Assembly (NCBI GenBank): GCA_002794465.1
Contig: MTSL01000168.1
Span: forward strand, 5,683 to 36,000
Reading direction: 5' to 3'
DNA from: Paramicrosporidium saccamoebae KSL3
Lineage: Eukaryota; Fungi; Cryptomycota
DNA: 30,318 nucleotides
Shown here: positions 9,621 through 25,985 of the stretch, in pieces
Numbering within the stretch: the stretch's first letter is position 1
How the letters are laid out: each line of letters begins with the position of its first letter
Notes under the pieces: generated by a model
The model's input: the letters and a program-made list of their open reading frames with translations, nothing else
What the model was told of the DNA's origin: nothing
Databases searched by the model: none
Translations under genes and position numbers: made by a program

Positions 9621-9694
9621 TGTCTCGTCCCGGACTCGAACCGGGGACCGCCTGTGTGTTAGACAGGCGTGATAACCATCTACACCAACGAGAC
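9621..9694 (-). tRNA. tRNA-Val(AAC)
   Basis: The reverse complement GTCTCGTTGGTGTAGATGGTTATCACGCCTGTCTAACACACAGGCGGTCCCCGGTTCGAGTCCGGGACGAGACA folds to a cloverleaf: acceptor GTCTCGT/ACGAGAC, anticodon stem CCTGT/ACAGG with loop CTAACAC, T-loop TTCGAGT. A T-run terminator follows. Confidence 0.96.
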
Positions 9695-10641: not shown

Positions 10642-12121
10642 ATGTGTCCTACTTTGACAGAAGAATTGGCCCATAGTCAGGGCTCCATCTACCAGGACGC
10701 ACGTAGCGACATGGAGATATTCGAAAAAGGCCTTGATAAAATATTGTCGACAGTAGACCTTTCAACAACAGAGCTCAGCCCCGCCGAGGTGGATACTTCG
10801 CGGAAGATTCGGAAAAAGTATGGATTGGAGGAGCTCTGCCAGACTGACGATTCCTCCATCTGTCTTTCACGACATAGCAGCTCGGGACGAGACCATGGCC
10901 AGGAGATTGCGATTCTCCACTCGACGCTGCATTTGCTGACTCGCCGTTTCCTGGAAGAGCTCGTGTCGGGAGGAACAGTGGAGAATGAGCATCCGCTACT
11001 GGAGCCGTTCCTGGCCGTGCTAGAGGTCATGCTATGGCATGGCTGGCAGGGCAGCTTTTTGGGACGAAGGAGTATTTGGGGACTGGTCCGACGGACGAAT
11101 AGCGGTGCAGTGGAGAATGTGCGACAATGGGAGGGGTTGAAGAGTAGTGCAGGGAGAGTACGGGCCTGGATCCGACTAACAATCATGAACAAGACATTGG
11201 CTACCGATCTAACCCATCTCATCAACTCTGAGGGCGCCTTGATTGCGTATGAGCATCATGATGTTTTCAATGTGTAGGGAATGTTATGATGATTGGGCCT
11301 GTATGAGATCCGACGAATTCCAGCCCATGTTAGCACTCATCAGCACACTGGACGCCATCGATTTTAATCTGTTTGTCAAGGAGGAGGAGATTGCCAAGAC
11401 TGGCTTTACCGACGACTGGAGTGGATTATTTGCGGGGAATCAGTTGAATTTTGACCGGCTAACTCCCCCAGTGCGTATTTCACTGAATTTGCTGCGGGTC
11501 GGGTCGATGAAATCCCCCTCAATGGGAAGCCTTCTCAGTCAGGGAAAGGGTAACGATGACGATTTGGTAATGCAGCGTCTAATCGCCCTGAATGACGAAA
11601 ATGCGCGACTGCGAAGGTCGCTGGTTGCACAAATAAACCAGCGCGCATACTTCCAGGAGGAATACCGACGGGCCCAAACACGCTGTGCTGCTGCTCTCCT
11701 AGAAAGTCACACCTTTTACGAAGACAATGGGATACTACAGCGACGCGTCAAGGAGTTGGCATCGTTGATTGAAGTTCATGAACGAACAAATGAGGCATTA
11801 CAGGAGCAACTTGCAGATGCCTACAATGACGACACGGGCGATAGGGAGCAGGGTAGGAGAATGCGGGACACAATCAATCGACTGGGAGCCGAGTTGGAGA
11901 CGGAACGGATGCACCACAAAGCGGCCCGTTCTGAACTCGATCAGCGGGAAAGCAGTGAAACGTCAGCAATAGAACAGCTAAAGAGCCAGTTGGCCGAGTT
12001 ACGGGAATGCGAAGACTCGTGGACTGATCGTGTCAAAATGTTGCAAGAACAGCTAAAGCTGGCCAACAGTCTAAAAGAGGAATACAAACGACGTCTGAAA
12101 TCTTCCAGTCCCGATCCATAG
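10642..12121 (+). CDS. RUN-domain plus coiled-coil protein, RUFY/RUNDC3-like, no FYVE; join(10642..11246,11278..12121), 482 aa
   Basis: A 31-nt intron 11247-11277 (GTATGA...TGTAG) restores the RUN domain: PFLAVLEVMLWHGW...SIWGLV...GRVRAWIRLTIMNKTL...LIAECYDDWACM...LDAIDFNLFVKEE. An E/Q/R-rich coiled coil follows. Confidence 0.85.
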
Positions 12122-12221: not shown

Positions 12222-13307
12222 TTACGGCTTTTGGTATCCACCATGCACCAAATAAGTGTTGGGAAAGGTCTCTCGCAGCTTGGCCACCGAGTAGGAGCTC
12301 TTCCAATAATTCATGACAATCTCGGCATACACAAATTTGTGTATCACCTGACGCACCACCATAATATTCTCCAGATCGTAGAGGAACCGCCAAAAGTCTG
12401 TATCAAAGGAACGGTCCTTTCGGGGAGTGGCAGCCTGCACATATGGACGATAGTGGCGGATGTACCAGGCGCGGAATTGTCGATCTCCCACATTATACAG
12501 GGCATTGCCGTTCATGTGGAAATACTGCGGAGGATGGCGGGTAGCATAGACTCCCTTATTGTAGCCGCGATAGATGCTGCCCTTCATCCAGAAGGACGGC
12601 TGGGGCCAGCGCACCGAAGTGTCCAAGGCATTGAGCCAGTTGCTGCGGATCGGATAGCAATCGGGTTCCATATAAAAGACGTACTGTCCGGGATACTGCA
12701 GCTTCACCTTGCCAACCAGCAGCTTTTCAATCATCAGACGGGTGCCCTTGTAATAAGTGTCGCTACTACCACTCAGATTAGCGTGTTGGATCTCAATGGA
12801 CTGGAAACAGGACAACACGTCAGAAGTCAGATTGGCCACGGCAGCCTGGAGACGCGCCTCCAACTCGGCAATATACGCCTTTTTCTTCGAATCCGCTGAA
12901 CTGTACAACACCAAATGATATCCTGTGAGAGGAGAGGCGGGCTGTCCCTCTCGACTGCAAGGTGGAAAGGTTTGCCACAGTCGCAAATTCCCCTCCACTC
13001 GACCCACTTGGCTGGTGTGGAATGGCATCACCACGTGTGTTAGACGCTGTCCATGGTACGTTGGATAATTGTCACTGCATGTGCCGTTGCCATAGTGTTG
13101 CACACATTGCTCCCCACTGCTCAAATTCATCACTGGACGTCCATTGCTGTTTCCAACGTGCAGCATGCGTCCCACATCGAGGTCATCCTCCTCCTCCAGG
13201 ATCATGGCCAAACGACGGTAGAAGCGCTCCCCCACAAACAACACATTGGCCGCTATACTAAAGTACAGAATCAGCACGGTTGTCCGTCGCTGTAGAATGG
13301 GCAACAT
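12222..13307 (-). CDS. Array paralog P1: type II membrane, putative GT-A glycosyltransferase-like protein, motifs intact, 361 aa
   Basis: First in-frame ATG at 13307 (the ORF track uses a TTG). N-terminal TM; LTHVVMPF, WQTFPPC, YVFYMEPDC, FWMKGS, HMNGNALYN, FDTD, HGG. The functional call is inference. Confidence 0.8.
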   Translation of the reverse strand: MLPILQRRTTVLILYFSIAANVLFVGERFYRRLAMILEEEDDLDVGRMLHVGNSNGRPVMNLSSGEQCVQHYGNGTCSDNYPTYHGQRLTHVVMPFHTSQVGRVEGNLRLWQTFPPCSREGQPASPLTGYHLVLYSSADSKKKAYIAELEARLQAAVANLTSDVLSCFQSIEIQHANLSGSSDTYYKGTRLMIEKLLVGKVKLQYPGQYVFYMEPDCYPIRSNWLNALDTSVRWPQPSFWMKGSIYRGYNKGVYATRHPPQYFHMNGNALYNVGDRQFRAWYIRHYRPYVQAATPRKDRSFDTDFWRFLYDLENIMVVRQVIHKFVYAEIVMNYWKSSYSVAKLRETFPNTYLVHGGYQKP

Positions 13308-13407
13308 TGGCACGTAATGAGAGGGATTAGACTTTCTAAACAAAACATCACATTGCCTTATTGGGACGGCGAGGAAATCTGTCTGGATCGGGAAGGGGCG
13401 GCTGACA

Positions 13408-14466
13408 ATGGCGGCGAAAGGGAAGAGTCGGACCTGGCCCGCTTATCTTGTTCTGCTAGCCAGCACCACATTGAATGTGCTGCTTCTTGTGCAACTCTTT
13501 AACAAGAATGCGTCTATGGATGAGATGGTGTGGCAGCCCGTGTACCGATCCTGGCCAGGATGGCTGTCACTTGTCCGTCCAGACATGAAGAATGTGGACC
13601 TCACCAAACTGGATGCTCCACCCACCCATCGCGGCAAGCTCAGTCACGTCTTGTTCACCATGAGGGACACTATGGAGGATTTCATCGAGTTTCAGGAAAC
13701 ACTGGAATATTGGAAAAAGTATCCGCCCTGTCTGGTCGACTCTTACCCAACCAATACGGAACAATCAGATATTTCCCTGGTAATATACTACGACGCAAAG
13801 CCAGCCCGAAAGACGCTAAGAAGAATTGTCCGCGCCTTAAACAATCTCCCGTCCCCAGTTAAATCGTGTTTTGCTCAAGTTCAAATCCGTCACGCGGGCC
13901 TAATGCCCCTTCATTCTCTTATTCCTGAGGCTGAACGGGCGCAATGGCGATCCGTCTTTACATCACTCCTCACCAATACTGCTGCTATAGAGGCCCCCAA
14001 CCATGTGCTGATCCTTTCCAGCGCCTGTCGACCCGTGCAGCCCGATTGGCTGAATCATGTGGACTACCAGACTCGTCCCCCGAATGAACATGCCTGGATC
14101 CGCGGAAGTGCCTTTCTTGGCTACACAGAAACACTGCCCACCAGTCTGGGGGAGTTGGTACGCATCTCACCCGCAGGACTATACTTTCTCGGCGACTCGA
14201 GCTTTGCACAATTCTACATGACACGGGTGAGGCCGTGGTATCAGACCACCGAAGCTCCTCTAGGCGAATTCAATGATCGCTGGGCACTGGACATGGCTGC
14301 ATATCTTGCACGCGATACAGATGAAGGTGATTGGATGGCCGTTACTCATCAATTCCGCCATGCCAGCTTCATTGCCGACTATAGCGGACGAACTGTTTCC
14401 TTGGAACAAATCCATCGTGACCGTCCTGACACGGTTCTCGTTTGTGCTCGCAATATCGTCCCCTAA
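13408..14466 (+). CDS. Array paralog P2: same family, putative catalytic motifs degenerate, 352 aa
   Basis: TM, LSHV, YWKKYPPC, SCF, WL...TRPP, WIRGS are retained. EPD is replaced by SSA, HxNGNA by RISPAG, DTD by ALD, HGG by CAR. Confidence 0.8.
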   Translation: MAAKGKSRTWPAYLVLLASTTLNVLLLVQLFNKNASMDEMVWQPVYRSWPGWLSLVRPDMKNVDLTKLDAPPTHRGKLSHVLFTMRDTMEDFIEFQETLEYWKKYPPCLVDSYPTNTEQSDISLVIYYDAKPARKTLRRIVRALNNLPSPVKSCFAQVQIRHAGLMPLHSLIPEAERAQWRSVFTSLLTNTAAIEAPNHVLILSSACRPVQPDWLNHVDYQTRPPNEHAWIRGSAFLGYTETLPTSLGELVRISPAGLYFLGDSSFAQFYMTRVRPWYQTTEAPLGEFNDRWALDMAAYLARDTDEGDWMAVTHQFRHASFIADYSGRTVSLEQIHRDRPDTVLVCARNIVP

Positions 14467-14759
14467 TAAAGTCATTTTCATTACGAGCTCCAGGTGTGAT
14501 GTAAGGGCTGATTAGCTGGATATTTGTGTGCTAGGACGCGAGACGTGGTGGGTCAACCCGCTATATTTAAGGCCTAAGAACTCCCATTGGTTGCTACGAT
14601 CTGACGGCGAGCCTTGCCCCATAAATGAAAACGATATTTAATAAAAGGGGCTCTCGCTTGAAGTGTCACAATAAGGGGTTCCTGCACCCAGGCCGTTGTA
14701 TCACCACGGAACAGAACGCATCAATTAGCTGGGTATTTGAAGCCAGTGAGCAAGATTTC

Positions 14760-14799
14760 ATTTCGCCTCATTTCGCCCCATTTCGCCTCTTCTCGCCCG
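14760..14799. repeat. 10-nt tandem repeat ATTTCGCC(T/C)C, ~4 copies, upstream of P3
   Basis: ATTTCGCCTC ATTTCGCCCC ATTTCGCCTC TTCTCGCCCG. Confidence 0.7.
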
Positions 14800-14933
14800 A
14801 ACGAGGCCATTGGATTAACGATGGACGAGATTTCTTAATACGTGGTATTCTCCCCACTACGCGACATATGCATGCCCAAATCGGGCTAAATTCATTTTCC
14901 TTATATCGTGTTTACCGCTGGGAAAATCCGATC

Positions 14934-16040
14934 ATGATGAGGGACGTGATAGTAGAGGGATTGTGGACCATTGCCACGATCATCTCCATTTCTATCAACT
15001 TTCATCTCCTGGGCATTGTACTGGAGCGGCCCGAAAATCCCCGTGAATCCACTGCCCCACTCTCGCGTTTCCCAGTCCCCGCAGTGCCGGCCAAACAAGC
15101 CCGTGACAACACAACGGATGCCTTAGTATCCGCTTCATCATTAGCCTTTTCCCCCAAGGACCTTGAAGGACTGCCAAAATTTACGGGAATGCTCAGTCAT
15201 GTGGTTCTCGAGGTGGGCGAAGGCAAGGATGAGGAAGAAAAGATCAAACGTCTGTTTGAATATTGGAGCAAATTCCCGCCCTGTCTGTTGGCTTCGAATC
15301 CCACTAATTGGAGTCAGTCCGAGATTACCTTTAGCATGTTGTTACGTGGCACTCGGGAGGCCAAGAAAGTGGAGCAGCTGAAGCAGCTCTTTAACACACT
15401 GCCCAAGACGGTGCGCGCATGTTTCAAGACGTTTGAGATTTTGCAGGCTGGATTGCCAGACCTCAAAAATAATCGGCTGGAGACATTGCGGGATGACTCC
15501 CGGAAACTCTTCTCCGCCATCATGCTGAATAGCATTAAACTGGAAAAACCCAATCATGCGCTGTACATTTCGGCCGACTGTGTGCCAATCCAGCCCAATT
15601 GGCTGAATTTGGTGGATTATCGCACTCGTCCGCCGAACGAGCCGTTCTGGATGCAAGGCAGCGTGTTCCGTGGCCAGCGTTCCGAGTGGACGCGAAACAT
15701 GGCATCTTTTCTGCATCTGAGTCGGTATTCAATCTACAATCTGGATGATGCTGCCTTCAGGACGTGGTATCTTCATAGCGTAGTGCCCTACACTCGGGAA
15801 GTGCCCATCCCCCTCTATGACTTTGGCCGGTGGGATATGGATTTGGCCCATTATCTGGCCGATGTTGGCCGGTCAGTAGACTATCAAATGGCTGCCTCAA
15901 AGTTCCGTCTGACCAATACAATTCTGAATCAGTGGAATGTCACCATCAACATTCCCGAAATTATATCACGTGAACCTGATGTGGCCATTGCGTGTGGGAT
16001 TGTTCCTGAATTGATAAAACAAGTTCTTGAGACGCAATAA
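14934..16040 (+). CDS. Array paralog P3: same family, motifs degenerate, 368 aa from ATG 14934
   Basis: TM directly after ATG 14934; YWSKFPPC, ACF, WLNLVDYRTRPPNEPFWMQGS. EPD is replaced by SAD, HxNGNA by HLSRYS, HGG by CGI; DMD is retained at the DTD position. Confidence 0.8.
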   Translation: MMRDVIVEGLWTIATIISISINFHLLGIVLERPENPRESTAPLSRFPVPAVPAKQARDNTTDALVSASSLAFSPKDLEGLPKFTGMLSHVVLEVGEGKDEEEKIKRLFEYWSKFPPCLLASNPTNWSQSEITFSMLLRGTREAKKVEQLKQLFNTLPKTVRACFKTFEILQAGLPDLKNNRLETLRDDSRKLFSAIMLNSIKLEKPNHALYISADCVPIQPNWLNLVDYRTRPPNEPFWMQGSVFRGQRSEWTRNMASFLHLSRYSIYNLDDAAFRTWYLHSVVPYTREVPIPLYDFGRWDMDLAHYLADVGRSVDYQMAASKFRLTNTILNQWNVTINIPEIISREPDVAIACGIVPELIKQVLETQ

Positions 16041-16066
16041 ATTCTGTTATGTAACTGAATAATATG

Positions 16067-16205
16067 GAATTGGGACTCGACTGAATCAGGGAATTATCAC
16101 TCGACTAAATCAGAGAATTGTGACTTGACTAAATTAGAGAATTGTCACTCGACTGAATCAGAGAATTGTGATTCGACTAAATCAAAGAATTGTCACTCGA
16201 CAGTA
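16067..16205. repeat. 24-nt tandem repeat, ~5.8 copies, with alternating (48-nt higher-order) structure
   Basis: Units start GAATT at 16067, 16091, 16115, 16139, 16163 and 16187; consensus GAATTGT[CG]ACTCGACT[AG]AATCAGA. Confidence 0.9.
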
Positions 16206-16302
16206 CCAAGTCTATTATAACATTGCGTATCGAAAATTCAACAGTTTTGTGAACAGACGGAATAAAGAGGACATTGGTGCGTCCATTGGGTTATTTATCC
16301 TA

Positions 16303-17277
16303 ATGAGGAACACGGTTAGACATGTGTTGCTCTTCTCTGTCATTCTGAACGTTTTGCTGCTAGATTTATCAGGATGGAAGAATGTCACCCAAAAGCAAAG
16401 AAATGGTTCGCTCCCGTTGCTCCATCCAGCCAACTGTTTGGCGGGTTTTGACGCACAGAACATTCGAATGCGACAGTATGCCTATCGAGCCCGTCTTACC
16501 CATCTGGTCATTGTTTTCAGCAAGCGTCAGATGGCTGACTTGCAACGTCTGCTCCACTCCTGGGTCAGCCATCCACCCTGCAAAGCCGACGTCCCGCGAC
16601 CCCTCGGACCGTTGGGAAGGAATATCCATTTGGTGTTGCACGTGTCCGAGTCCAGGAAAATAGCGAGAATCCAAGCCAAATTGGAGGTCATGTACAAAGG
16701 GCTACCGCCCGCGATTCAAAAGTGTTTTCAGGACATGTCGGTGAGTTTTGGAGAATTGGATAATTCCCACGCAGTGGAATACGATTGGGGACGATGGATC
16801 CTCTTTGACCATATGGTGACAGGCTATCTGGGCATTATTGATCCTTCCTACGTTTACTACATGAATGTACACACCCGACCAGTGGCATCAGGTTGGCTTG
16901 GCACTCTTGATTCGCTCTGTCGATGGCCCAGTGCTCCATTCCTCATAAAGGGCACCATGATGGCTGCTCAAAATACAACCCATCCACCCCACCTGAGCGA
17001 GGAGGCGCTATACTACTTGGGAAGTTCTGCCCTACGATTGTTCTATCTAAACTACATATCGCCTCTCATCGCCAGTGGGAAGGACCATTTTGTAGAAGAA
17101 TGTATTACGCGCTTTCTTGATGATCCCACTCAACAGGAAACTTCGTCACAGGTTGCGCATCAAGTCCAATACACTGACGTGTTATCCTTTGCGCACAATT
17201 CGCCGTTCACTGTGCAACAATTGTTAGTGACGCGACCGAACACAGTACTAGCCAGGGGATATGCTGGGCAGATTTAG
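16303..17277 (+). CDS. Array paralog P4: same family, motifs degenerate, 324 aa from ATG 16303
   Basis: TM, RARLTHLV, WVSHPPC, KCF, WL...RWP...IKG are retained. EPD is replaced by NVH, HxNGNA by HLSEEA, DTD by VEE, HGG by RGY. Confidence 0.78.
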   Translation: MRNTVRHVLLFSVILNVLLLDLSGWKNVTQKQRNGSLPLLHPANCLAGFDAQNIRMRQYAYRARLTHLVIVFSKRQMADLQRLLHSWVSHPPCKADVPRPLGPLGRNIHLVLHVSESRKIARIQAKLEVMYKGLPPAIQKCFQDMSVSFGELDNSHAVEYDWGRWILFDHMVTGYLGIIDPSYVYYMNVHTRPVASGWLGTLDSLCRWPSAPFLIKGTMMAAQNTTHPPHLSEEALYYLGSSALRLFYLNYISPLIASGKDHFVEECITRFLDDPTQQETSSQVAHQVQYTDVLSFAHNSPFTVQQLLVTRPNTVLARGYAGQI

Positions 17278-17461
17278 AATAAAGCCATTGTAGTTCTTGG
17301 ATAGTGTCGTGAATTATGGATCGTAGATAAAGGAATAAGGGATAAAGGATAAAGGGATATCTCTCCACCTGTCCAACTTGGTGAAATTGACTTTGTGGAC
17401 TTTGTTCGACAATTAGAATAAACATAACTATATTTGGAAGTGATTCTGGATACGGAACTGG

Positions 17462-18934
17462 ATGGAAAAGTATCATCGTGCAGTTCAAACAGTTTTGGTG
17501 CTGAATCTGGTGTTTTGTGCCCTGCTCCTTCAGCAATTGTTCTTTGTCGCTAAACCGGAGCAGCATGGCAAACTAAAGAGAGTGAAAAATTCCGGCTCGG
17601 AAGGGAGGACCGAGTTTTCAAACAATAGGCCGATATGGAATAACGCGGCGGAACTATTAGGCAGGGTTAATGTGACAGAATTAACAAGTGGAAATAACAT
17701 GAAGGAATCGTTGGGGAGAAATGACGTGACAGAATCATTGGGAGGAGATGACCTGACAGAATCATTGGGAGGAAATGACGTGACAGAATCATTGGGAGGA
17801 AATGACGTGACAGAACCGTCAGGAAGAAATAGCATGCAGGCATCATTGGGAAGAAATGACGTGATGGAATCACCAGACGGGATTAATGTGACGGAATCAC
17901 CAGACAGGATCAATGTGACGGAATCACCAGAAAGGATTAATGTGACGGAATCATCAGGCATGATTAACGTGACGGAATCATCAGGCAGGAGTAACGTGAT
18001 AGAATCAACAGGTAGGAGTAACATGACAGAATTATCCGGAGGAAATGACGTGACGGGACCATCAGACAGTAATGACCCACCAATGGGTGATATTGTGCTA
18101 AAGTCTCCACAACGACTACGAGATGTCGTGATTCCCTTTACAACGGGTCAAGTCTCGCGCGTATTTGAACAGTTTGACAGCTGGCGTAGTTTCCAACCCT
18201 GTCCAACCGTTCCTCCAAAGGGATCGTTGCCAGAAGGCTATGAATTCTACATGGCCAACCCAGACGTGGGTCGTAACATTACCCTCACTTTGGCGCTCTC
18301 CGGATTGGATGATCCAGGAGTCCGGAAGACGCTGTTGGATCGATTCCACAGTCTGCCCAAGGCCACAACCCAATGTTTCCGGGAGGTGCGGGTGGTCTTT
18401 GCTAATCTGACTGGCTCAGAGGACAGCTATCTGTCGGGTGCACGCAACATGGTGGAAGCTATGATGCGCAACGACTTTTATCTCGATGACCCATACTATG
18501 TGCTGTACATTGAGCCGGATTGCAGACCATTGAAGCGCTATTGGCTCGCCGCAATGGATGCCATGACGAGGCCGCCCACTGCTGATTTTTGGATTAAAGG
18601 CTCGTTGTACCGTGGTACCAGTCGAGGTGTCATTGAGAACGAGGTTTATGCGCGCCATCTCAACGGTAACGCAATATATCGGGTTGGCGATCCCGAATTC
18701 TTAAAGTTTCATTTTGACAAGGTGGTACCACATCCGGGATATAGAAGCGGCTATGACACGGATCGATACCAGTACTTTGCCGATCGGCGCGACGAGGTTT
18801 TAGGAGTTCGTCACAAGTTTGTCTACAGTGATTTCATCCAGAACATGTGGCATTACGAATACAGCCGGGCTCAATTACTGGCCGCCTCGCCCTACACCTT
18901 TATCACCCATGGGGGCTCTCCCAAACCGGAGTAA
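17462..18934 (+). CDS. Array paralog P5: same family, motifs intact, long repeat stem, 490 aa
   Basis: TM, repeat stem, then YVLYIEPDC, FWIKGS, HLNGNAIYR, YDTD, THGG. Confidence 0.82.
   Translation: MEKYHRAVQTVLVLNLVFCALLLQQLFFVAKPEQHGKLKRVKNSGSEGRTEFSNNRPIWNNAAELLGRVNVTELTSGNNMKESLGRNDVTESLGGDDLTESLGGNDVTESLGGNDVTEPSGRNSMQASLGRNDVMESPDGINVTESPDRINVTESPERINVTESSGMINVTESSGRSNVIESTGRSNMTELSGGNDVTGPSDSNDPPMGDIVLKSPQRLRDVVIPFTTGQVSRVFEQFDSWRSFQPCPTVPPKGSLPEGYEFYMANPDVGRNITLTLALSGLDDPGVRKTLLDRFHSLPKATTQCFREVRVVFANLTGSEDSYLSGARNMVEAMMRNDFYLDDPYYVLYIEPDCRPLKRYWLAAMDAMTRPPTADFWIKGSLYRGTSRGVIENEVYARHLNGNAIYRVGDPEFLKFHFDKVVPHPGYRSGYDTDRYQYFADRRDEVLGVRHKFVYSDFIQNMWHYEYSRAQLLAASPYTFITHGGSPKPE
17654..18058 (+). 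repeat. Coding 27-nt (9-aa) tandem repeat x15 in the P5 stem
   Basis: LLGRVNVTE, LTSGNNMKE, SLGRNDVTE, SLGGDDLTE, SLGGNDVTE x2 ... SPDRINVTE ... LSGGNDVTG; spans exactly 15 x 27 nt. Confidence 0.9.
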
Positions 18935-19136
18935 TAGAACATTGTGTAGTGCATGTAATGTGTACGACGTATAGGATACATTTGTGAGTTTCAATTACTT
19001 GTTACACTGTTTTTTAATGTAGTCTGGGCGATTGACAATGAAAGGCATTTTTGCCACTACCAAGCATACTGTCCCACCCGCCATCTACAATGTACGCAAT
19101 TTACAATAACAACCCACCCTATCGCCCATATGACGT

Positions 19137-19747
19137 CTATAGTCCAAGGAAGGAAAGCTGGGTCTCGAGCGGCATAATCTGCGCCATAAGCTTTTCAGTC
19201 TTGATGGCCAGCGCCAAAAACAGTTCATCGTTGGAGGCAGTCGTCTCAGGAGCGGTAAATGCAGTGTTCTTGCGGCCAACTACCCCCAGGTTGTAGTCGA
19301 TCAGCAATCGACATTGCGGGGGGGGTTGTGGGACGGTAGGGGCACAAGATCAGGGGAATTAAGATGTTTGAAAATGGTTTGTTGGGTGGCCGCATCATAG
19401 AGTCCCAGGGTCTTACGAGAATAGACCAGAAGGACGAGTGACCGACCCTCCTCATAATCGACGGGCCATTGGGTAATTACGGGGACTTGCATTTCGTCAT
19501 CAGAGAGACGCCTGGGGATGAGATGCCGACTGTTTTCATCCGAATTGACCCAATCCTGCATATTGTACGCCACCTCCAAGTCGGCAAACTGCAAACCATA
19601 TTCACTCTTACTACCTTTCATTTGCACAGTTGGCGGCATCACCAACACTACTCGTCGTACTGAAAGCCGTGCCAACAGAGCAATCGTTTCAGCAAAGTCT
19701 TCGCGATTACAGGGCACCACCTCGTTCAGTGCATCCCATTCTTTGTA
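19137..19747 (-). pseudogene. Probable C-terminal continuation of the DxD GT-like gene, past an in-frame TGA and a C8 frameshift (or spliced exons)
   Basis: In the same frame as 19748-20509, an open frame continues after the TGA (YKEWDALNEVVPCNREDF...) to the C8 run at 19318-19325. One extra C would continue it as ...QCRLLIDYNLGVVGRKNTAF...SFLGL to TAG 19137-19139. There is no ATG near its 5' end. Confidence 0.45.
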
Positions 19748-20613
19748 TCAGAAATGATATACATTTGGCGTCTTTTCAAAAATCTTGGTGTAACTCTCCG
19801 GATGATTCCGCAGAATGATCATGTCGGAAATGTGCGACTCGTGAGAATCAGTGTAATTTGCCATCAGCGCCAAGTGACGGGCAATTGCAGGGGGCCCCGC
19901 GTGGGCGAGCATTGGCCACAGATTAAAGGGGTATGAGTAGGCCTCGTCATAGCCCACCTGGGGGAAATGCACCTCGCCCAGGGCCAAAATGTCATAGTCC
20001 ATGAATGTGCCCCCACCAATCATCTCAAACGCCATCCATCGACGATAACAGATCAGCTCATAATATGGATCGTTGAAGGTGGGGTAACTGGAAAAGATTT
20101 CGGTTAGTCGAGTGAAATTGGCGTGTTTCTCCATGTCCTTGAGGATGAGGATGCGCGGCTTGTAGCCATAAATGTGCCAACTGCGCAACCACAGGCGTGT
20201 GATCCGCTGGGTGTAGTCTTCCGCATAGCCCAAAGCCGGTTCGTAATATGTGTAAACAAAACTCATGTCCGGACCGGCCAATTGAGGCACCAATCTGGCT
20301 GTAGCAGGAGCCACAATCTCATTGACTGTCTTTTTAGGCGCTCTCCCCTTTACCAGCAGGGAAATTCGTACTGCCTCTGCCCTCTTCTTGGCTGCCAACG
20401 AAGCGGGGTCGAGGGGAGGCGGCTCCAGCTCTCTCTGTATGATTATAAAGCTGACATTGGGCAAACTTAGCAAGACTAGGAAGAATCCACAAAAGATCAG
20501 CCCTACCACTGCCCCTTTCTAACCGTACCCCTTATGGCCAGACATTTCTGGGTCAGTGTACACATTGCCAATTTCCATTTTTGGATACGAACCGTTTTCG
20601 CCTCCCTCGCCAT
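19748..20613 (-). CDS. Second-family putative glycosyltransferase-like type II membrane protein (DYD motif), unrelated to P1-P8; 5' structure uncertain
   Basis: TM (VVGLIFCGFFLVLLSL), then VYTYYEP, LWLRSWHIYG, YELICYRRWMAFEMIGGGTFMDYD and SHISDM. The ORF lacks its own ATG (in-frame TAG at 20519-20521). ATG 20613 plus a 74-nt intron 20592-20519 would give MAREAKT-KGAVVGL. Confidence 0.6.
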
Positions 20614-20783
20614 TGCGTATTTGCAGCGATAGCTTATAGCCTCACTTGCAGTGATTAAATATGCGACAATGATTGTCAATGCTGCAAAAGCCGAATTGCT
20701 AGTTTGTCAACAACTCGACATTCATCAAAATCGTTTCGGACTTCCAAATTTGGAAAGTGGCTGTTTGAGACCGTCCGACTGGA

Positions 20784-22058
20784 ATGCTCTCATCGTACCG
20801 ATGGGCTATTCGTACCCTGTTTGCCATCAGTCTGATAACTTGTGCCTTGCTCAGTCAGCGAGTCTTCCGGACCTTTAAATTAGAGTCAACTGTACTACGC
20901 TATGGAAGGGGTGCTGGTGCACCTAGAAGAAACCCCCAAAATGTAGAAATCCCACGAGACGCGATAAACGTCGAACCATTGAGGTCTGCTCCACCTGAAC
21001 AGAAGGACGAGGCAAAGTTGGACATTCCAAAGACAATCACACAACTGTCTGTAGACGACTTACAGGCCACCAACAAATCTTTGGTAGACAATGTAACGAC
21101 AGCCAACCAACTGTTGGTAGACGATGCAGAGACAACCAAACAGCCGTCTGTAGAACCACAAAACAGTGCGACGACAGACCAACCATCCGACGCGTCAAAG
21201 GGGGATATACTTATGGATGGAAGACACGCCGTCCCACAGCGATTAAAGGACGTAGTAATCCCCTTTAATGCAGCTCAAGCGGAGCGCATGGTAGAACATT
21301 TCAAGACATGGCTTACCCATCCGCCTTGTCCCGCCGAGCCCTTCCATGTTCCACCCACCACCGAGGGTTACGAGTTCTATGCCAACAATCCAGATGTCGG
21401 TCGGAACATTACACTGACATTGGCGCTTTCAGGCACGACTGACAAAAAAATCCGTAACTTCCTGCTGAGCAGATATCAGGAACTGCCGGCAGGTATCCGC
21501 AGCTGCTTTCGGGAGGCGCGGGTGGTGTTTGCCAACTTTACCGGCGACGACGATTCATATTTTAACGGTTCACGCAATATGGTGGAAGCTATGATGCTGA
21601 ACAAGTTTGGTCTGAAGGATCCCTTTTATGTACTGTACATTGAGCCGGACTGTCTCCCCGTCCGCAATTATTGGCTGTCCGCACTGGATGCCATGACACG
21701 GCCGCCAGCCGACACCTTCTGGATCAAAGGCAGTCTGTACCGTGGGGGCAGCATTGAGGTGCAACGCATGGAGCTGTATGCACGCCATCTTAACGGAAAC
21801 GCCATCTACAATATTGGCGACAAGGACTTTTTGCAATTCCACTTTAGCAAGGTGGCCAAGCAAGTCAGCAACATTGGCTATGACACGGATCGGTATCAGT
21901 ACTTTATCAACCACCCCTACGAGGTGTTACCATTGCAGCATCGCTTCCAGTACTCGGATGTGGTGCAGAACATGTGGCATTTTGACTTTAGCAAACGCCT
22001 TTTGGCGGTAAAATCGCCTTTGACGTATATTGTGCACGGCGGCTTCCCCCGTGAATAA
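20784..22058 (+). CDS. Array paralog P6: same family, motifs intact, closest to P5, 424 aa
   Basis: NPDVGRNITLTLALSG and RNMVEAMM are shared with P5; YVLYIEPDC, HLNGNAIYN, YDTD, VHGG. Confidence 0.82.
   Translation: MLSSYRWAIRTLFAISLITCALLSQRVFRTFKLESTVLRYGRGAGAPRRNPQNVEIPRDAINVEPLRSAPPEQKDEAKLDIPKTITQLSVDDLQATNKSLVDNVTTANQLLVDDAETTKQPSVEPQNSATTDQPSDASKGDILMDGRHAVPQRLKDVVIPFNAAQAERMVEHFKTWLTHPPCPAEPFHVPPTTEGYEFYANNPDVGRNITLTLALSGTTDKKIRNFLLSRYQELPAGIRSCFREARVVFANFTGDDDSYFNGSRNMVEAMMLNKFGLKDPFYVLYIEPDCLPVRNYWLSALDAMTRPPADTFWIKGSLYRGGSIEVQRMELYARHLNGNAIYNIGDKDFLQFHFSKVAKQVSNIGYDTDRYQYFINHPYEVLPLQHRFQYSDVVQNMWHFDFSKRLLAVKSPLTYIVHGGFPRE
21042..21165 (+). repeat. Coding 33-nt (11-aa) repeat, ~3.5 copies, in the P6 stem
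   Basis: QLSVDDLQATN / KSLVDNVTTAN / QLLVDDAETTK / QPSVE... Confidence 0.7.
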
Positions 22059-22229
22059 AAGTCGCTATAGAGAAATTGTCCATGGACAATACGCGGTCAA
22101 CAGGCCTTTGTTCTAATAATCTTTAATGGGTCGTCATGGCTACACAAGCATAATATACACAACATGCATAAAATCTACAATATACAATATACACAACGCA
22201 CACATAGTCGGCTTGTTTCCAACCCGATC

Positions 22230-23291
22230 ATGTACGGAAGAATCACACGCTATGTACTGTTCGGTCTCTGCATATGGATGGGCTACAAGATCTCCATCTT
22301 TGTCCAGTTGGTGCGTCACAATTACGGCAGCCCCCAGGCCGTGTCTACAGCCAAACTTGTGACATTGTTAAAGACTTTGACGCTAACAGAGACGGCCACT
22401 GTCACTGTTCCCTCCTACATCACCTCCACTGCATACTCCACGGTTACCTTGGCCTCCCCAGGAAATGGCCATAATCACGGTCTGTCGCACATTGTCATTC
22501 CGGTAGCATTCAAGCCCAGTCAGTTGATCAAGTTGGAGCGCAGTCTCAAATGGTGGGACGTTCATCCGCCCTGCTTAGATGGCAGTTGGCCCAATCGGCC
22601 CGGCGAAACCAACACAACATTGACATTCCTCTGCTATGGACGACTGACTGCCGGCCAACGTACCAAACTGCAGGATTTGTATTGGTCGCTCAACTGGCAG
22701 GTCCGTCGCTGTTTCCAGGAAATGGAGATTCGCAGTGCCGATCTCGATGACGCCTCCGATAACCATAATAAGGGATCACGAGCCATGTTCGAATCAATCA
22801 CTAGCGGCAATATTGGTCTGAAGAGCCCGCGATATGTATTCTGGATGGAGCCTGATGCCGTCCCCATCCGACCCGATTGGCTGAATGCCTTGGATCGTAC
22901 GTGTCGCACTGATGAAAAGTTTTGGGTCAAGGGAAGTACACTGCGTCATGATCTAAACCGACAGGTGCTTGTCCAAAGATACGGCCAGTCATTCCTTTAC
23001 CATATTAATGGAAACGCCATCTATAACATGGCTGCTGACGAATATCCGGCCTTTTATTACAACACCCTCCTCCCTTATTTGGATACCATAGGGAAGCGTC
23101 ATTCCCACTTTGATACCTCACTGGCCATCTATCTCCAAGATATTGAGAATGTAGACCATTGGCGGCACATTGGCCATCATTTCCAGTACACTGAGCTAAT
23201 CCAGAACCGCTGGGGAGAAAACTATTCAGTCCATGAACGAGCCATCAAATACCCCAACACTTATATTATCCATGGCGGAGTGCCGCAGTGA
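22230..23291 (+). CDS. Array paralog P7: same family, motifs intact, Thr-rich stem, 353 aa (alternative ATG 22164)
   Basis: TM, TLTLTETATVTVPSYITST stem, WWDVHPPC, YVFWMEPDA, FWVKGS, HINGNAIYN, FDTS, IHGG. Confidence 0.8.
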   Translation: MYGRITRYVLFGLCIWMGYKISIFVQLVRHNYGSPQAVSTAKLVTLLKTLTLTETATVTVPSYITSTAYSTVTLASPGNGHNHGLSHIVIPVAFKPSQLIKLERSLKWWDVHPPCLDGSWPNRPGETNTTLTFLCYGRLTAGQRTKLQDLYWSLNWQVRRCFQEMEIRSADLDDASDNHNKGSRAMFESITSGNIGLKSPRYVFWMEPDAVPIRPDWLNALDRTCRTDEKFWVKGSTLRHDLNRQVLVQRYGQSFLYHINGNAIYNMAADEYPAFYYNTLLPYLDTIGKRHSHFDTSLAIYLQDIENVDHWRHIGHHFQYTELIQNRWGENYSVHERAIKYPNTYIIHGGVPQ

Positions 23292-23661
23292 CGTCTTGTG
23301 GTGGCATGTGACGGCGTGGAACGTCACATAATGCCGTGGAATCAGGCAGGATGAGCTACAGTCACACGCTAAAATATAGTAATCATGATATATTGACAAC
23401 ATTCTACGCTTGCAATTAATGACAGCAACTTTTGATTCACGACCCACGGCCATTCCCAACACATCCACATCACATTACACACCATCAACACGCTCCCAAC
23501 ACACCACCCACGTCAAACATCACAGAGGTCCAGTCATAGACGTCACTTTACGCAATATGTCCATCTTTAGATGAATACCCCGATATATTGCGATTGGTCC
23601 TTAGTAACGGTTGTCAAGGTGTGTTGCTTATATCAAAAACCGGCCCCCCTCTACTCCCAGC

Positions 23662-24744
23662 ATGTTAGATCCCCGTCTACGTGCCCTCCTGGTCCTGTCT
23701 CTTCTCGGCAATGTCGTGCTGGTCGTCTTTTACTACACCTTCTCCGTTCCCGCCCTCCATGCCGTTCAAAAGGGTCTGAACTGTTGGGATCTTGAGGCGC
23801 AAAAGGCCGACTATTACCTCGACGTCAACATGATGTCGCTCCCCATGTATCGTCCCCAATCCAGCGAACTAAACGTCAAACGTGCTCGATTGACCAACTT
23901 GGTCATGCCGTTCCATGCCCGACAGGAACCAGCCGTGATGCGGAATTTGGAGCTGTGGAAGCACTTTCCGCCATGCTATCTGGCCGAGGAGCCTGGAACC
24001 CATCCCAACCAAGATTACATGGACTCGTTCTTTGCTCGGGATGAACATCCTGCCGGACGGCTCGGGCGCAATGTCACCTTAACCTTCTTCGTCTCCTCTG
24101 AGGCTGACCCCGAGTTGGAAATGCGTGTGCTGGGCGCCTTCAATGCGCTGCCCATCCGGATTCAGAAATGTTTCAGCAGTGCCAATGTTCGTTTTAGTCG
24201 GCTCTCCAACGAGGACGACAAGTATCTGACTGGCAGCAGGAAAATGTTCGAGTACATGTTGAATGGATGGCTTGGCCTGCTCGAGCCCTATTATGCCCTG
24301 TATATGGAGCCTGACTGTCTGCCTGTCCGTCCTAACTGGCTCATGATACTCGATTCACAGACCCGTTGGCCCAACAGTCCGTTCTGGATCAAGGGAAGTA
24401 TTTTCCGCGGCGATGCCCATGCAATCACCAATCGAATTGTCTACAACCTGTTCCACATTAATGGAAACGCACTCTACAATCTAGGCGATCCGTCCTTCCG
24501 TCACTTTTACTTTGACATGTTGCGTCCCTACATTACAAAATACTACACAGAGGGCGCCTATGATACGGACGTGTTCAAATTCCTGCTGGATCTCGGAAAT
24601 TACAATTACGCGCGGCAGACGGCACACATGTTCCAATTCACCGACGCAATTCAGAACCATTGGCATTCGAATTATTCGATTGGCGAGCTGAAGGCCATGA
24701 GTGAGACGGTCGTGTTAGTTCATGGTGGTACTCCGAATCCGTAA
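23662..24744 (+). CDS. Array paralog P8: same family, motifs intact, 360 aa
   Basis: ATG 23662 followed by TM; RARLTNLVMPF, WKHFPPC, YALYMEPDC, FWIKGS, HINGNALYN, YDTD, VHGG. Confidence 0.82.
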   Translation: MLDPRLRALLVLSLLGNVVLVVFYYTFSVPALHAVQKGLNCWDLEAQKADYYLDVNMMSLPMYRPQSSELNVKRARLTNLVMPFHARQEPAVMRNLELWKHFPPCYLAEEPGTHPNQDYMDSFFARDEHPAGRLGRNVTLTFFVSSEADPELEMRVLGAFNALPIRIQKCFSSANVRFSRLSNEDDKYLTGSRKMFEYMLNGWLGLLEPYYALYMEPDCLPVRPNWLMILDSQTRWPNSPFWIKGSIFRGDAHAITNRIVYNLFHINGNALYNLGDPSFRHFYFDMLRPYITKYYTEGAYDTDVFKFLLDLGNYNYARQTAHMFQFTDAIQNHWHSNYSIGELKAMSETVVLVHGGTPNP

Positions 24745-24755
24745 CTTACTGGTAC

Positions 24756-24961
24756 AATGTATAGCCTGGATGTCTAGCGTTCAATTATTATAAAGAATCC
24801 ACCTATCAGAGCACTGTCTAGTGTTCAATTACCATAAAGGATCCACATGTCAGAATGTGTAGCCTGGATGTCTAATGTTTAATTATTATAAAGAATCCAC
24901 ACATCAGAATGTGTGGCCGGGATGTCTAGTGCCTAATTATTATAAAAAATTCACCTATCAG
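24756..24961. repeat. 54-nt tandem repeat, 4 units (second unit 44 nt), between the convergent P8 and HROB 3' ends
   Basis: Units at 24756, 24810, 24854 and 24908; consensus AATGTGTAGCCTGGATGTCTAGTGTTCAATTATTATAAAGAATCCACCTATCAG. Confidence 0.92.
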
Positions 24962-24981
24962 AAATATGCAGCGCCCGATAA

Positions 24982-25985
24982 TCAGACATGATGCACATTG
25001 GAATAGATTTTGACCAGGTTGTTTGGGGTAATAATCAAATGTCGATCGGTCTGTTCGTTTAAACAGAATATGGTCACATCCTGCACCAGCAGAGCAAGTC
25101 CAAAATGAATCCTAATCTTGTGCGTGGATAGCACTTTTTCATGGATCGTGGCAGAAATAGCCCCGCTCTCATCCAACAAAGTGACACCCAGATCGCGGGC
25201 ATTGACAGATACTTCGCGCACCATCATCAACATTAACGGACATTTTGTACCCGATGCCAAAGTCTTTACGATAGAAATGCTGGTCAATTGGGATAGATTG
25301 ACACCTTTGGTGTTACTAATTATCGAATGTGCATTCCGAGTCCAATCCGAGACTGCAAAGTTTTCTGGAAAGAATGGGTATGGAAGGAATTGGAGCAGAT
25401 TGTCATTAAAATCTGGTATGCGCAAAGGTACGCTTGTGGCAATCGGTCCAGAAACTGGCCTAGGAATTGATTCAGGCATTACTCTGGGTGTTGATTCAGG
25501 CATTACTCTGGATGTTGATTCAGGCATTAGTCTGGGGGTTGATTCAAGCATTATTCTGGGTATTGATTCAGGCATTACTCTGGGCGTTGACTCGAGAATC
25601 AATCTGGAATCCAGTTCAGGAATCGGTTCGGAAATCAAGCCAATAGTTGGCCCTTCAAATGCTCCCACAGTCGGTTTCACTGGCATTTGCACATCATCTT
25701 GCATAAAGTCAATTTCACTAGACAATGGAGTGACGCTTTTCTGCACATTCTGTAGAGCTGGCATAGCCGACGCGGCTTGAATGGTATGCGCCGTTTGTGC
25801 AGTGGGTGGCATGCAATCAATTTCGTCCAACAGTGCCAGAATGGCTTCCTCGTCGTCGCTGCTCTCCATTCTTGTACGCTTCATTGGCGTTGCCGGTGTT
25901 GCTATCTTTGCGCTAGTTTTGTTCTTAAGTGCATCCAAAGTTGCCTAGACCTTATTGAATCCACCAACAAAGTTACCCGTAGCAT
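24982..25985 (-). CDS. HROB: HROB/MCM8IP (C17orf53, DUF4539 OB-fold) homolog; probable join of 25985..25977 and 25944..24982, ~323 aa
   Basis: C-terminal LLDESGAISATIHEKVL...GLALLVQDVTIF...HLIITPNNLVKIYS matches HROB FKDPTGEMQGTVHRLLL...GSVLLLKQIGVF...YLNVTPNNLVHIYS. The proposed 32-nt intron is 25976-25945 (GTAACT...TCTAG) after ATG CTA CGG; otherwise the first in-frame ATG is 25884. Confidence 0.8.
25467..25610 (-). repeat. Coding 24-nt (8-aa) tandem repeat x6 in HROB
   Basis: TTGATTCAGGCATTACTCTGGGTG-type units every 24 nt on the + strand; the protein reads ESTPRVMP / ESIPRIML / ESTPRLMP / ESTSRVMP ... Confidence 0.92.

What the first reader, a model, noticed from the sequence alone, without database searches (positions are those of the whole stretch)
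12222..24744. Eight-gene tandem array of an unrecognised GT-A-like type II membrane protein family: a candidate glycan-synthesis locus
Seen in sequence: eight paralogs (P1-P8) fill ~12.5 kb of a genome that is otherwise compacted. All have an N-terminal TM, W-x(3)-[PQ]PC, a second invariant C-F, and in the intact copies GxRxM, EPD, FWxKGS, HxNGNAxY, [YF]DT[DS] and terminal HGG. Established knowledge: GT-A enzymes carry DXD, G-loop, xED and C-His motifs in that order, and GT15 (Kre2/Mnt1) uses an EPD variant about 26 residues after an RHM helix. Here RxM lies 23-24 residues before EPD in P1 and P5. Inference: this is a lineage-expanded Golgi or surface glycosyltransferase family, possibly building spore-wall or host-interface glycans. 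I cannot assign it to a named CAZy family.
Basis: partly seen in the sequence, partly recalled or inferred. Interest (0 to 1): 0.85.

Follow-up and report, generated by a model that had tools for sequence, protein, structure and literature searches.

The report
Tandem array of unclassified GT8-like glycosyltransferases
Eight neighbouring genes in the amoeba parasite Paramicrosporidium saccamoebae encode membrane-anchored proteins predicted to have a sugar-transferring enzyme fold; they belong to a widespread family that no database names, and three of the eight have lost the residues needed for catalysis.

Summary
A family HMM finds exactly eight paralogs in the window. All eight have one N-terminal hydrophobic anchor, W-x3-[PQ]PC and a second C-F. 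P1, P5, P6, P7 and P8 also keep GxRxM, EPD, FWxKGS, HxNGNAxY, [YF]DT[DS] and HGG. P2, P3 and P4 have lost them. An unrelated minus-strand gene interrupts the array at 19137-20578.

The window comes from Paramicrosporidium saccamoebae (Rozellomycota). An AlphaFold2 model of P8 (pLDDT 87.8) matches only GT-A glycosyltransferases in the PDB. GT8 ranks first and Kre2/Mnt1 (GT15) ninth. The order and spacing of the four motifs copy GT8. No Pfam, NCBIfam or PDB sequence match exists.

The family is not lineage-specific. It has 1745 clusters at 50% identity, with members in Hydra, Naegleria, a chytrid and bacteria. Bacterial members are fused to other glycan enzymes, and in several loci they sit beside GDP-L-fucose synthesis genes.

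Related genomes carry the array in the same place. The motif-lost copies form their own clade in three genomes, so they are probably non-catalytic partners.

Verdict: a real, unclassified GT8-like family. Donor, acceptor and any spore-wall role are untested.

The parts
12222..13343 (-). P1: motif-intact family member (EPD, HMNGNALYN, FDTD, VHGG). The likely ATG is at 13307. TM segment at residues 21-39 of the listed ORF.
   Evidence: hmmsearch 398 bits; motifs; TM and ATG; orthologs at 63-69% identity in L001 and L003, bootstrap 100
13408..14466 (+). P2: motif-lost member (SSA for EPD, RISPAGLYF for HxNGNAxY, VCAR for VHGG) that keeps the fold motifs W..PPC, CF, WL..D and W.RGS.
   Evidence: groups with L006_7101 (bootstrap 94) inside a motif-lost clade with bootstrap 100; alignment A5
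14625..16040 (+). P3: motif-lost member (SAD, HLSRYSIYN, ACGI). The TM segment is at residues 115-133 of the long ORF, so the real start is probably the ATG at 14934 or 14937.
16168..17277 (+). P4: motif-lost member (NVH, HLSEEALYY, VEEC, ARGY). The likely ATG is at 16303. A 24-nt tandem repeat (16067-16201) lies upstream.
17462..18934 (+). P5: motif-intact member with a 211-residue stem. The stem contains about 13 copies of a 9-residue repeat (27-nt period, 17672-18069) that carries N-V-T sequons.
   Evidence: 60% identical to P6 and pairs with it at bootstrap 100
19137..20578 (-). Unrelated gene that interrupts the array, annotated in NCBI as PSACC_02546, hypothetical protein. It has an N-terminal hydrophobic segment and a conserved GGGTFMDYDIL motif. 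In this assembly it carries an in-frame TGA at 19748-19750 and a frame break at a run of eight C at about 19325-19332. It is not part of the family.
   Evidence: the family HMM does not detect it; it is absent from the related arrays; model pLDDT 64 with no fold match
20784..22058 (+). P6: motif-intact member with a 150-residue stem; recent duplicate of P5.
22164..23291 (+). P7: motif-intact member (EPDA, HINGNAIYN, FDTS, IHGG).
23611..24744 (+). P8: motif-intact member and the copy closest to the family consensus. The likely ATG is at 23662, which gives the 360-residue product seen as P0001. This is the copy that was modelled.
   Evidence: 445 bits; AlphaFold2 pLDDT 87.8; Foldseek; orthologs at 53-55% identity in L001 and L003

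Best explanation
The locus encodes a family of type II membrane proteins of the secretory pathway whose lumenal domain is a GT-A glycosyltransferase built on the GT8 plan.

Five copies (P1, P5, P6, P7, P8) are predicted to be active. By analogy with GT8, and with GT15, I infer the following roles. The E-P-D that follows strand beta-4, together with the C-terminal His of HGG, would hold a divalent metal and the diphosphate of a nucleotide sugar. The Asn of HxNGNA and the D-T-D would contact the donor sugar. The sugar would then be transferred to a glycan or protein acceptor, probably with retention of anomeric configuration.

The two cysteines found in every eukaryotic copy (PPC and CF) probably form a lumenal disulfide.

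Three copies (P2, P3, P4) keep the fold but have lost all four catalytic motifs. They are most likely non-catalytic partners, such as anchors, scaffolds or regulators of the active paralogs, in the way GAUT7 serves GAUT1 within GT8.

What is shown: the eight paralogs, their predicted topology, the predicted fold, the motif pattern, the conserved position of the array in related genomes, and the glycan-synthesis setting of the bacterial relatives.

What is inferred: metal dependence, retention, the disulfide, the partner role, and the Golgi or ER location. Donor and acceptor are unknown. Gene neighbours in bacteria point to a GDP-sugar, possibly GDP-L-fucose, for at least one bacterial subclade.
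For: Fold. The P8 model has pLDDT 87.8 and pTM 0.78, with a TM helix at 21-45 and alternating beta-alpha elements from residue 94. In Foldseek against the PDB, 89 matches have E<=0.001 and the 50 listed are all GT-A glycosyltransferases. The best are GT8: 3tzt at E 4.8e-7, then LgtC, LARGE1, XXYLT1, GlyE and glycogenin. They are followed by GT77 AgtA, GT15 Kre2/Mnt1, GT24 UGGT and GT6 GTA/GTB. GT8 also leads the viral-library matches.

Motif geometry. EPD (233-235) follows strand 228-231 directly, which is where GT-A enzymes carry DxD. The spacing in P8 is E233 -> N284 (+51) -> D318 (+85) -> H371 (+138). In GT8 WaaJ it is D130 -> N180 (+50) -> D215 (+85) -> H264 (+134). In 3tzt it is D108 -> N158 (+50) -> D193 (+85) -> H244 (+136), read as LDPD, YYNSG, PDQD and LHFCG.

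Conservation. E233, D235, H282, N284, N286, A287, D318, G372 and G373 are at least 90% conserved across 59 diverse members. Bacterial relatives keep ExD, HxNGNAxYN, YD and HG but lack the cysteine pair.

Functional setting in bacteria. The domain is fused to GT4 and MptE-like domains or to an FkbM methyltransferase. It lies next to an ABC transporter and sulfotransferases. GDP-mannose 4,6-dehydratase and/or a GDP-L-fucose synthase homologue lie within about 5 kb in 5 of 11 loci. The synthase passes NCBIfam's equivalog cut-off in the two loci checked. One eukaryotic relative (L005) lies next to FUT8-like and GT10 genes.

Topology. Every copy has one N-terminal hydrophobic segment and a variable stem. 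The P5 stem is a sequon-bearing repeat.

Motif-lost copies. They remain intact ORFs of 350-470 codons and form a clade with bootstrap 100 that includes copies from two other genomes, L003 and L006.
Against: No biochemical data exist for any member.

No sequence method links the family to GT8 or to any other glycosyltransferase family. Pfam gives nothing. hhalign against a two-sequence WaaJ/WaaO profile gives probability 0.08%, though that profile is very thin.

Foldseek TM-scores are moderate: 0.34-0.42 normalised on the query and 0.50-0.57 on the target.

A retaining enzyme acting on GDP-beta-L-fucose would make a beta-L-fucoside, which is unusual. So either the fucose lead or the retention inference may be wrong.

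The motif-lost copies evolve about twice as fast as the intact ones (33-34% identity between species, against 53-69%). This fits relaxed constraint as well as it fits a new role.
Confidence: 0.7

Rival explanations
1. The proteins have a GT-A fold but are not Leloir glycosyltransferases. They could use the nucleotide-binding fold for another reaction, such as sugar-phosphate transfer or nucleotide-sugar hydrolysis, or for binding alone as lumenal or surface lectin-like proteins.
For: No sequence-level link to any glycosyltransferase family. Three of the eight copies clearly cannot use the canonical motifs. TM-scores are only moderate.
Against: Every strong structural match listed is a glycosyltransferase. 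The four motifs match the GT8 catalytic motifs in order and spacing. The bacterial fusions and neighbours are polysaccharide-assembly genes.
Confidence: 0.12
2. P2, P3 and P4 are decaying duplicates, that is, pseudogenes in the making with no function. Only five genes matter.
For: All four catalytic motifs are lost. They diverge faster than the intact copies: 33-34% identity between species, against 53-69%. Two metagenome scans found no further relatives of this clade.
Against: All three are uninterrupted ORFs of 350-470 codons. At about 50% G+C, 350 codons free of stops would arise by chance with probability near (61/64)^350, about 5e-8. Motif-lost relatives in L003 and L006 form one clade with P2 and P3 (bootstrap 100). 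That clade still conserves W..PPC, LP..V..CF, NWL, FW..GS and LY..GD..F..Y...V.P. This implies selection on the fold since before the species split.
Confidence: 0.15
3. The family is a GT15-type (Kre2/Mnt1-like) GDP-mannose alpha-mannosyltransferase family, as the EPD motif suggested to the first reader. It would make O- or N-linked mannans.
For: EPD is the Kre2/Mnt1 form of DxD (from my own knowledge of the Kre2p/Mnt1p structure literature, not checked here). 1s4o is ninth in Foldseek at E 3.8e-5. The bacterial neighbours make GDP-sugars. O-mannosylation is the known glycosylation of microsporidian spore and polar-tube proteins (general knowledge, not checked here).
Against: There is no match to Pfam's GT15 model (Glyco_transf_15), as to any Pfam model, even at E<=5 in 59 members. 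GT8 structures score better. The motif spacing fits GT8 to within four residues, and the GT8 protein 3tzt itself reads D-P-D. The HxNGNA and DTD motifs have clear GT8 counterparts (YxNxG, DQD).
Confidence: 0.1

Closest known systems
CAZy GT8 (LgtC, glycogenin, WaaJ/WaaO, XXYLT1, the LARGE1 xylosyltransferase domain, plant GAUTs; Pfam Glyco_transf_8)
   Same: Best structural matches in both the PDB and viral libraries. Four motifs occur in the same order with almost the same spacing. The acidic motif after beta-4 is YMEPD here and YLDxD in GT8 (LDPD in 3tzt). The other three are HxNGNAxYNL against YxNxGhhhhNL, YDTD against PDQD, and VHGG against hHxxG. Eukaryotic GT8 members are also type II Golgi proteins. 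GT8 also includes a non-catalytic paralog that anchors an active one (GAUT7 with GAUT1; from my own knowledge).
   Different: No detectable sequence similarity (Pfam; hhalign). The first acid is Glu and the middle residue is a fixed Pro. The Gln of the GT8 DQD is Thr. The KPW that follows the GT8 His is missing. The N-terminal half has its own W-x3-PPC and CF cysteine pair.
CAZy GT15 (yeast Kre2/Mnt1 alpha-1,2-mannosyltransferase, PDB 1s4o)
   Same: GT-A fold, type II Golgi topology, and an E-P-D variant of DxD that acts with a C-terminal His in metal binding (from my own knowledge). Foldseek E 3.8e-5, TMq 0.38.
   Different: Ranks below eight GT8 and other entries. No Pfam GT15 match. The remaining motifs were not compared with Kre2/Mnt1.
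Multidomain bacterial polysaccharide glycosyltransferases of ABC-transporter-dependent pathways (general architecture)
   Same: Bacterial members of this family are modules inside such proteins, arranged MptE-like + this domain + GT4, or FkbM methyltransferase + this domain. They lie next to an ABC transporter and nucleotide-sugar genes.
   Different: The eukaryotic copies are single-domain, membrane-anchored, carry two extra cysteines, and are multiplied in tandem.

Membership tests
GT-A fold glycosyltransferase superfamily | A single Rossmann-like alpha/beta/alpha domain that resembles solved GT-A enzymes | tested here: met
   AlphaFold2 pLDDT 87.8. Foldseek gives 89 PDB matches at E<=0.001, and the 50 listed are all GT-A glycosyltransferases. 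The viral library agrees.
GT-A fold glycosyltransferase superfamily | An acidic DxD-type motif at the end of strand beta-4 | tested here: met
   E233-P234-D235 follows the modelled strand 228-231 directly. It is at least 90% conserved in 59 members and appears as ExD in bacterial relatives.
GT-A fold glycosyltransferase superfamily | The acidic motif, the sugar-binding residues and the C-terminal His meet in one nucleotide-sugar pocket | not testable with these tools
   Model coordinates are not exposed, so only linear order and spacing could be compared.
GT-A fold glycosyltransferase superfamily | Transfer of a sugar from a nucleotide sugar to an acceptor | not testable with these tools
   This needs an enzyme assay. 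The only indirect support is the glycan-synthesis setting of the bacterial relatives.
CAZy GT8 / Pfam Glyco_transf_8 | Significant sequence match to the family profile | tested here: not met
   No Pfam match for any of 59 members at E<=5. hhalign against WaaJ/WaaO gives probability 0.08% (that profile has only two sequences).
CAZy GT8 / Pfam Glyco_transf_8 | Motif series DxD ... N-x-G ... D-Q-D ... H-x-x-G with characteristic spacing | tested here: inconclusive
   The order and spacing agree to within four residues. The residues themselves differ: E for D, T for Q, and no KPW.
CAZy GT15 / Pfam Glyco_transf_15 (Kre2/Mnt1) | Significant sequence match to the family profile | tested here: not met
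   No Pfam match. The structural match 1s4o is only ninth.
Type II Golgi/ER membrane protein | Short cytoplasmic tail, one N-terminal signal-anchor, a stem, and a lumenal catalytic domain | tested here: met
   The hydrophobicity scan and ATG positions agree for all eight copies. Helix 21-45 appears in the model. Localisation itself was not tested.

The most novel reading that the evidence does not exclude
The family would be a new CAZy-level family of GT8-like enzymes that uses GDP-sugars, GDP-L-fucose among them, and so a kind of fucosyltransferase not yet described. In rozellid parasites its active members would work as hetero-complexes with dedicated catalytically dead paralogs encoded in the same array. 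Together they would build a lineage-specific glycan of the spore wall or the host interface.
Probability: 0.12. Interest if true: 0.7.

Novelty: new variant of a known kind. Interest (0 to 1): 0.5.

Why it matters
A family with about 1700 clusters at 50% identity, spread across bacteria and several eukaryotic lineages, carries no Pfam, NCBIfam or structural annotation. Every named member seen here is labelled hypothetical or uncharacterised. Assigning it to the GT-A fold with a GT8-like active site makes these proteins testable.

For Paramicrosporidium, one survey counted only 37 glycosyltransferases (PMC6690862). Five to eight more is a sizeable addition for a parasite with a compact genome. 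Keeping them suggests that the glycans they make matter for its life inside the amoeba.

The conserved pairing of active and motif-lost copies in one array is also a convenient natural system for studying pseudo-glycosyltransferases.

The bacterial members are soluble modules in defined polysaccharide gene clusters. They offer an easy route to finding the donor sugar.

Tried and rejected
Sequence searches that found nothing:
- Pfam on the eight paralogs, on ten long relatives and on all 59 alignment members gave no glycosyltransferase family. The only hit was DUF1647 in the N-terminal part of the Naegleria protein.
- NCBIfam on window and bacterial members gave nothing.
- Profile searches of PDB sequences with the 8- and 59-sequence alignments gave no hit at E<=10.
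- hhalign against a WaaJ/WaaO GT8 profile was not significant.
- The IMG/VR viral contig scan found no relative, so a link to giant viruses has no support.
- Two metagenome scans for more members of the motif-lost clade found nothing. dN/dS could therefore not be computed, and the available orthologs are too diverged.

The gene that interrupts the array:
- I tested the idea that it is a second glycosyltransferase because of its GGGTFMDYDIL motif.
- It has only four homologues in 5.8 billion proteins.
- The model of its intact homologue P0348 (first row of alignment A4) has pLDDT 64 and no fold match below E 0.027.
- It is absent from the related arrays.
- I therefore do not count it as part of the locus.

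Literature:
- The P. saccamoebae genome paper does not mention glycosyl-, tandem or expansion (PMC5701793).
- The GT-A fucosyltransferase WrtF is a GT2 enzyme and is unrelated (PMC12595478).

Other readings:
- A canonical microsporidian origin is rejected. The flanking genes include MCCC2, Tim17, HAUS6 and HROB, and one gene is named as Paramicrosporidium.


Full report
**What is in the sequence.** The window is gene-dense eukaryotic DNA with about 49% G+C. The flanking genes are a zinc-finger protein, an MFS transporter, HAUS6, the beta subunit of methylcrotonoyl-CoA carboxylase (MCCC2), a RUN-domain protein, HROB, a Tim17-family protein, NOP9 and an alpha/beta hydrolase.

One gene inside the finding matches the NCBI protein PSACC_02546 of Paramicrosporidium saccamoebae at 92% identity (91% of the query), on a contig of 88,000 bases. 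The closest named relatives of MCCC2 are early-diverging fungi at 69-75% identity. The source is therefore this rozellid, an intranuclear parasite of amoebae (PMC5701793), and not a canonical microsporidian.

**The observation.** I built an HMM from a 59-sequence family alignment and searched it against every six-frame ORF of the window.

- All eight copies have W-x3-[PQ]PC and a later C-F.
- P1, P5, P6, P7 and P8 also keep GxRxM, EPD, FWxKGS, HxNGNAxY, [YF]DT[DS] and HGG.
- P2, P3 and P4 have replaced EPD (SSA, SAD, NVH), the NGNA loop, DTD and HGG.
- Each copy has one N-terminal hydrophobic segment with an ATG just upstream, then a stem of 64-211 residues.
- The P5 stem holds about 13 copies of a nine-residue repeat containing N-V-T.

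Paralogs are 19-38% identical over the catalytic domain. The exception is P5/P6 at 60%.

Two corrections are needed. P1 is on the minus strand. An unrelated minus-strand gene (19137-20578) separates P5 from P6.

**What the proteins are.** No sequence method names them. Pfam finds nothing in the eight paralogs or in any of the 59 members, even at E<=5. NCBIfam finds nothing. Profile searches of all PDB sequences find nothing.

Structure prediction does give an answer. With the 59-sequence alignment, AlphaFold2 gives P8 a confident model: pLDDT 87.8, pTM 0.78, and 270 residues above pLDDT 90. It has an N-terminal helix at 21-45 and an alternating beta/alpha domain from residue 94.

Foldseek against the PDB returns 89 matches at E<=0.001, and the 50 listed are all GT-A glycosyltransferases. 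GT8 entries lead: 3tzt at 4.8e-7, then LgtC, LARGE1, XXYLT1, GlyE and glycogenin. GT77 AgtA, GT15 Kre2/Mnt1 (ninth), GT24 UGGT and GT6 GTA/GTB follow. GT8 proteins also head the matches to predicted viral structures. TM-scores are moderate, at 0.34-0.42 on the query and 0.50-0.57 on the target. This is a distant relationship, not membership.

**The GT8-like active-site plan.** EPD (233-235) follows the modelled strand 228-231 directly, which is the DxD position of GT-A enzymes. I compared motif spacing with two GT8 proteins read here.

| Protein | Acidic motif | Asn motif | Second acidic motif | His |
|---|---|---|---|---|
| P8 | E233 | N284 (+51) | D318 (+85) | H371 (+138) |
| E. coli WaaJ | D130 | N180 (+50) | D215 (+85) | H264 (+134) |
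| 3tzt | D108 | N158 (+50) | D193 (+85) | H244 (+136) |

The local sequences also resemble each other:

- YMEPDC against LYLDPDM
- HINGNALYNL against YYNSGLLLINL
- YDTD against PDQD
- LVHGG against VLHFCG

From published GT8 and GT15 structures (my own knowledge), the first acid and the C-terminal His bind Mn2+ and the diphosphate, while the Asn and the D-Q-D contact the donor sugar. I infer the same roles here. I also infer a retaining mechanism, because the closest folds are retaining families.

hhalign against a two-sequence WaaJ/WaaO profile is not significant. The link therefore rests on fold and motif geometry, not on sequence statistics.

**How widespread the family is.** A full HMMER search of 1.84 billion representative proteins finds 1745 clusters at E<=0.001 and 384 at E<=1e-30. 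Every named member seen is "hypothetical" or "uncharacterized":

- three Hydra vulgaris loci, one of them a single uninterrupted ORF on a 52.8-Mb chromosome
- Batrachochytrium salamandrivorans KAH9246699.1
- Naegleria lovaniensis XP_044555148.1, which carries DUF1647 in its N-terminal part

A scan of 185,579 prokaryotic genomes finds 11 bacterial loci, in Roseomonas, Rhizobiaceae, Rhizomicrobium, Caulobacterales, Lamprobacter, Chlorobiaceae, Gilvimarinus and others. These members keep ExD, HxNGNAxYN, YD and HG but lack the paired cysteines. That fits a disulfide which forms only in the eukaryotic secretory lumen (inference). No relative was found in viral contigs. The family is thus unrecognised but not lineage-specific.

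**Functional setting of the bacterial relatives.**

- In Lamprobacter and a Chlorobiaceae genome, the domain sits between an MptE-like domain and a GT4 domain in proteins of about 1070-1100 residues. In Lamprobacter the next gene encodes an ABC transporter, and a methyltransferase gene lies upstream in both.
- In a Rhizobiaceae genome it is fused to an FkbM methyltransferase.
- GDP-mannose 4,6-dehydratase and/or a GDP-L-fucose synthase homologue lie within about 5 kb in 5 of 11 loci. L010, L011 and L013 have both, L012 has the synthase, and L020 has the dehydratase. The synthase exceeds NCBIfam's equivalog cut-off in L010 and L013.
- Sulfotransferases occur in L013 and L020, and a GT2-GT4 fusion in L020.
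- One eukaryotic relative from a metagenome lies between FUT8-like and GT10 genes.

This is consistent with a glycosyltransferase role. It is also a lead towards a GDP-sugar donor in at least one subclade. The four alphaproteobacterial loci are related to one another, so the independent observations number about two. A retaining enzyme would make an unusual beta-L-fucoside, so the donor remains open.

**History of the array.** Related genomes carry the array at the same place. In L006 (GCA_047514055.1) the gene order is MCCC2, RUN, one further ORF, five family genes, HROB. In the window it is MCCC2, tRNA-Val, one ORF, RUN, the array, HROB. An activated-sludge contig (L001) has six copies around the carboxyltransferase gene. 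L003 (GCA_020047435.1) has three.

A neighbour-joining tree with 100 bootstraps gives these groups:

- P1 with one copy each from L001 and L003 (bootstrap 100; 63-69% identity)
- P8 likewise with one copy from each (bootstrap 83; 53-55% identity)
- P5 with P6 (bootstrap 100), a duplication specific to this genome
- P2 and P3 with motif-lost copies from L003 and L006 (bootstrap 100)

Most of the duplications, and the loss of the catalytic motifs, are therefore older than these species.

**The motif-lost copies.** They evolve about twice as fast as the intact copies: 33-34% identity between species. They are still uninterrupted ORFs of 350-470 codons in every genome. They also share W..PPC, LP..V..CF, NWL, FW..GS and LY..GD..F..Y...V.P. 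An unconstrained 350-codon frame free of stops has a chance probability of roughly 5e-8.

I conclude that they are retained non-catalytic proteins, most simply partners of the active paralogs. The GAUT1:GAUT7 pair in GT8 is a precedent (my own knowledge). This is inference. Slow decay remains a rival reading at about 15%.

**The interrupting gene.** PSACC_02546 encodes a protein with an N-terminal hydrophobic segment and a conserved GGGTFMDYDIL motif. It has only four homologues. Its fold prediction was weak and matched nothing, and it is absent from the related arrays. In this assembly it has an in-frame TGA where a relative has Trp, and a frame break at a run of eight C. The NCBI gene model steps over both with introns. 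I treat it as a bystander.

**Novelty and score.** Nothing in the genome paper, in a survey that counted 37 glycosyltransferases in this species (PMC6690862), or in my other literature searches describes this family. It is a new sequence family within a very well-known fold and mechanism. Its distinctive feature is the conserved active-plus-dead paralog array.

That is useful and testable, but it would not astonish a glycobiologist. I score interest at 0.5. I rate it a new variant of a known kind, with 0.7 confidence in the glycosyltransferase explanation.

Noticed in passing
window 19137-20578 (-): PSACC_02546-like gene. It has an in-frame TGA at 19748-19750 where the 66%-identical relative P0347 reads Trp (…NVYHFWYAEWDAL…). 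It also has a frame break at a run of eight C (about 19325-19332); after the break the relative's …LIDYNLG… continues in another frame down to 19137. The NCBI model removes both with introns. This is either a young pseudogene or an assembly error at a homopolymer.
   Followed up: partly
window 20525-20544 (-): Possible 20-nt GT…AG intron. It would join ATGTCTGGCCATAAGG to TGGTAGGGCTG and give the interrupting gene an ATG start (MSGHKVVGLIF…). The NCBI model uses a different splice. This is speculative.
   Followed up: no
window 10642-12121 (+): The RUN-domain gene is split over two overlapping reading frames with the junction near 11243-11277. This is probably a short intron. The same gene precedes the array in L006.
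   Followed up: no
window 9621-9694 (-): tRNA-Val (anticodon AAC) between MCCC2 and the RUN-domain gene.
   Followed up: no
window 25466-25608 (within the HROB-like gene 24982-25938, -): A 24-nt tandem repeat of about 5 copies. It encodes an eight-residue ESTPRVMP-type repeat in the N-terminal half of the HROB homologue.
   Followed up: no
window 16067-16201, 24771-24963, 6672-6821: Intergenic tandem repeats with 24-, 44/54- and 27/32-nt units. They lie upstream of P4, downstream of P8, and between the MFS and HAUS6 genes. The units are unrelated to one another.
   Followed up: no
L008 9971-10999 (Hydra vulgaris CP147928.1): The Hydra family member is one uninterrupted ORF on a 52.8-Mb chromosome, and it groups with a metagenomic eukaryotic copy (L005, bootstrap 100). 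With members also in bacteria, Naegleria and chytrids, the patchy distribution suggests horizontal transfers.
   Followed up: partly
L013 3072-4232 and L020 1418-2371: Sulfotransferase genes (Stf0-type and Sulfotransfer_3) lie beside the bacterial family members and the GDP-fucose genes. L020 also has a UDP-sulfoquinovose-synthase-like gene below the NCBIfam cut-off. These could be clusters for sulfated, fucose-containing polysaccharides.
   Followed up: no
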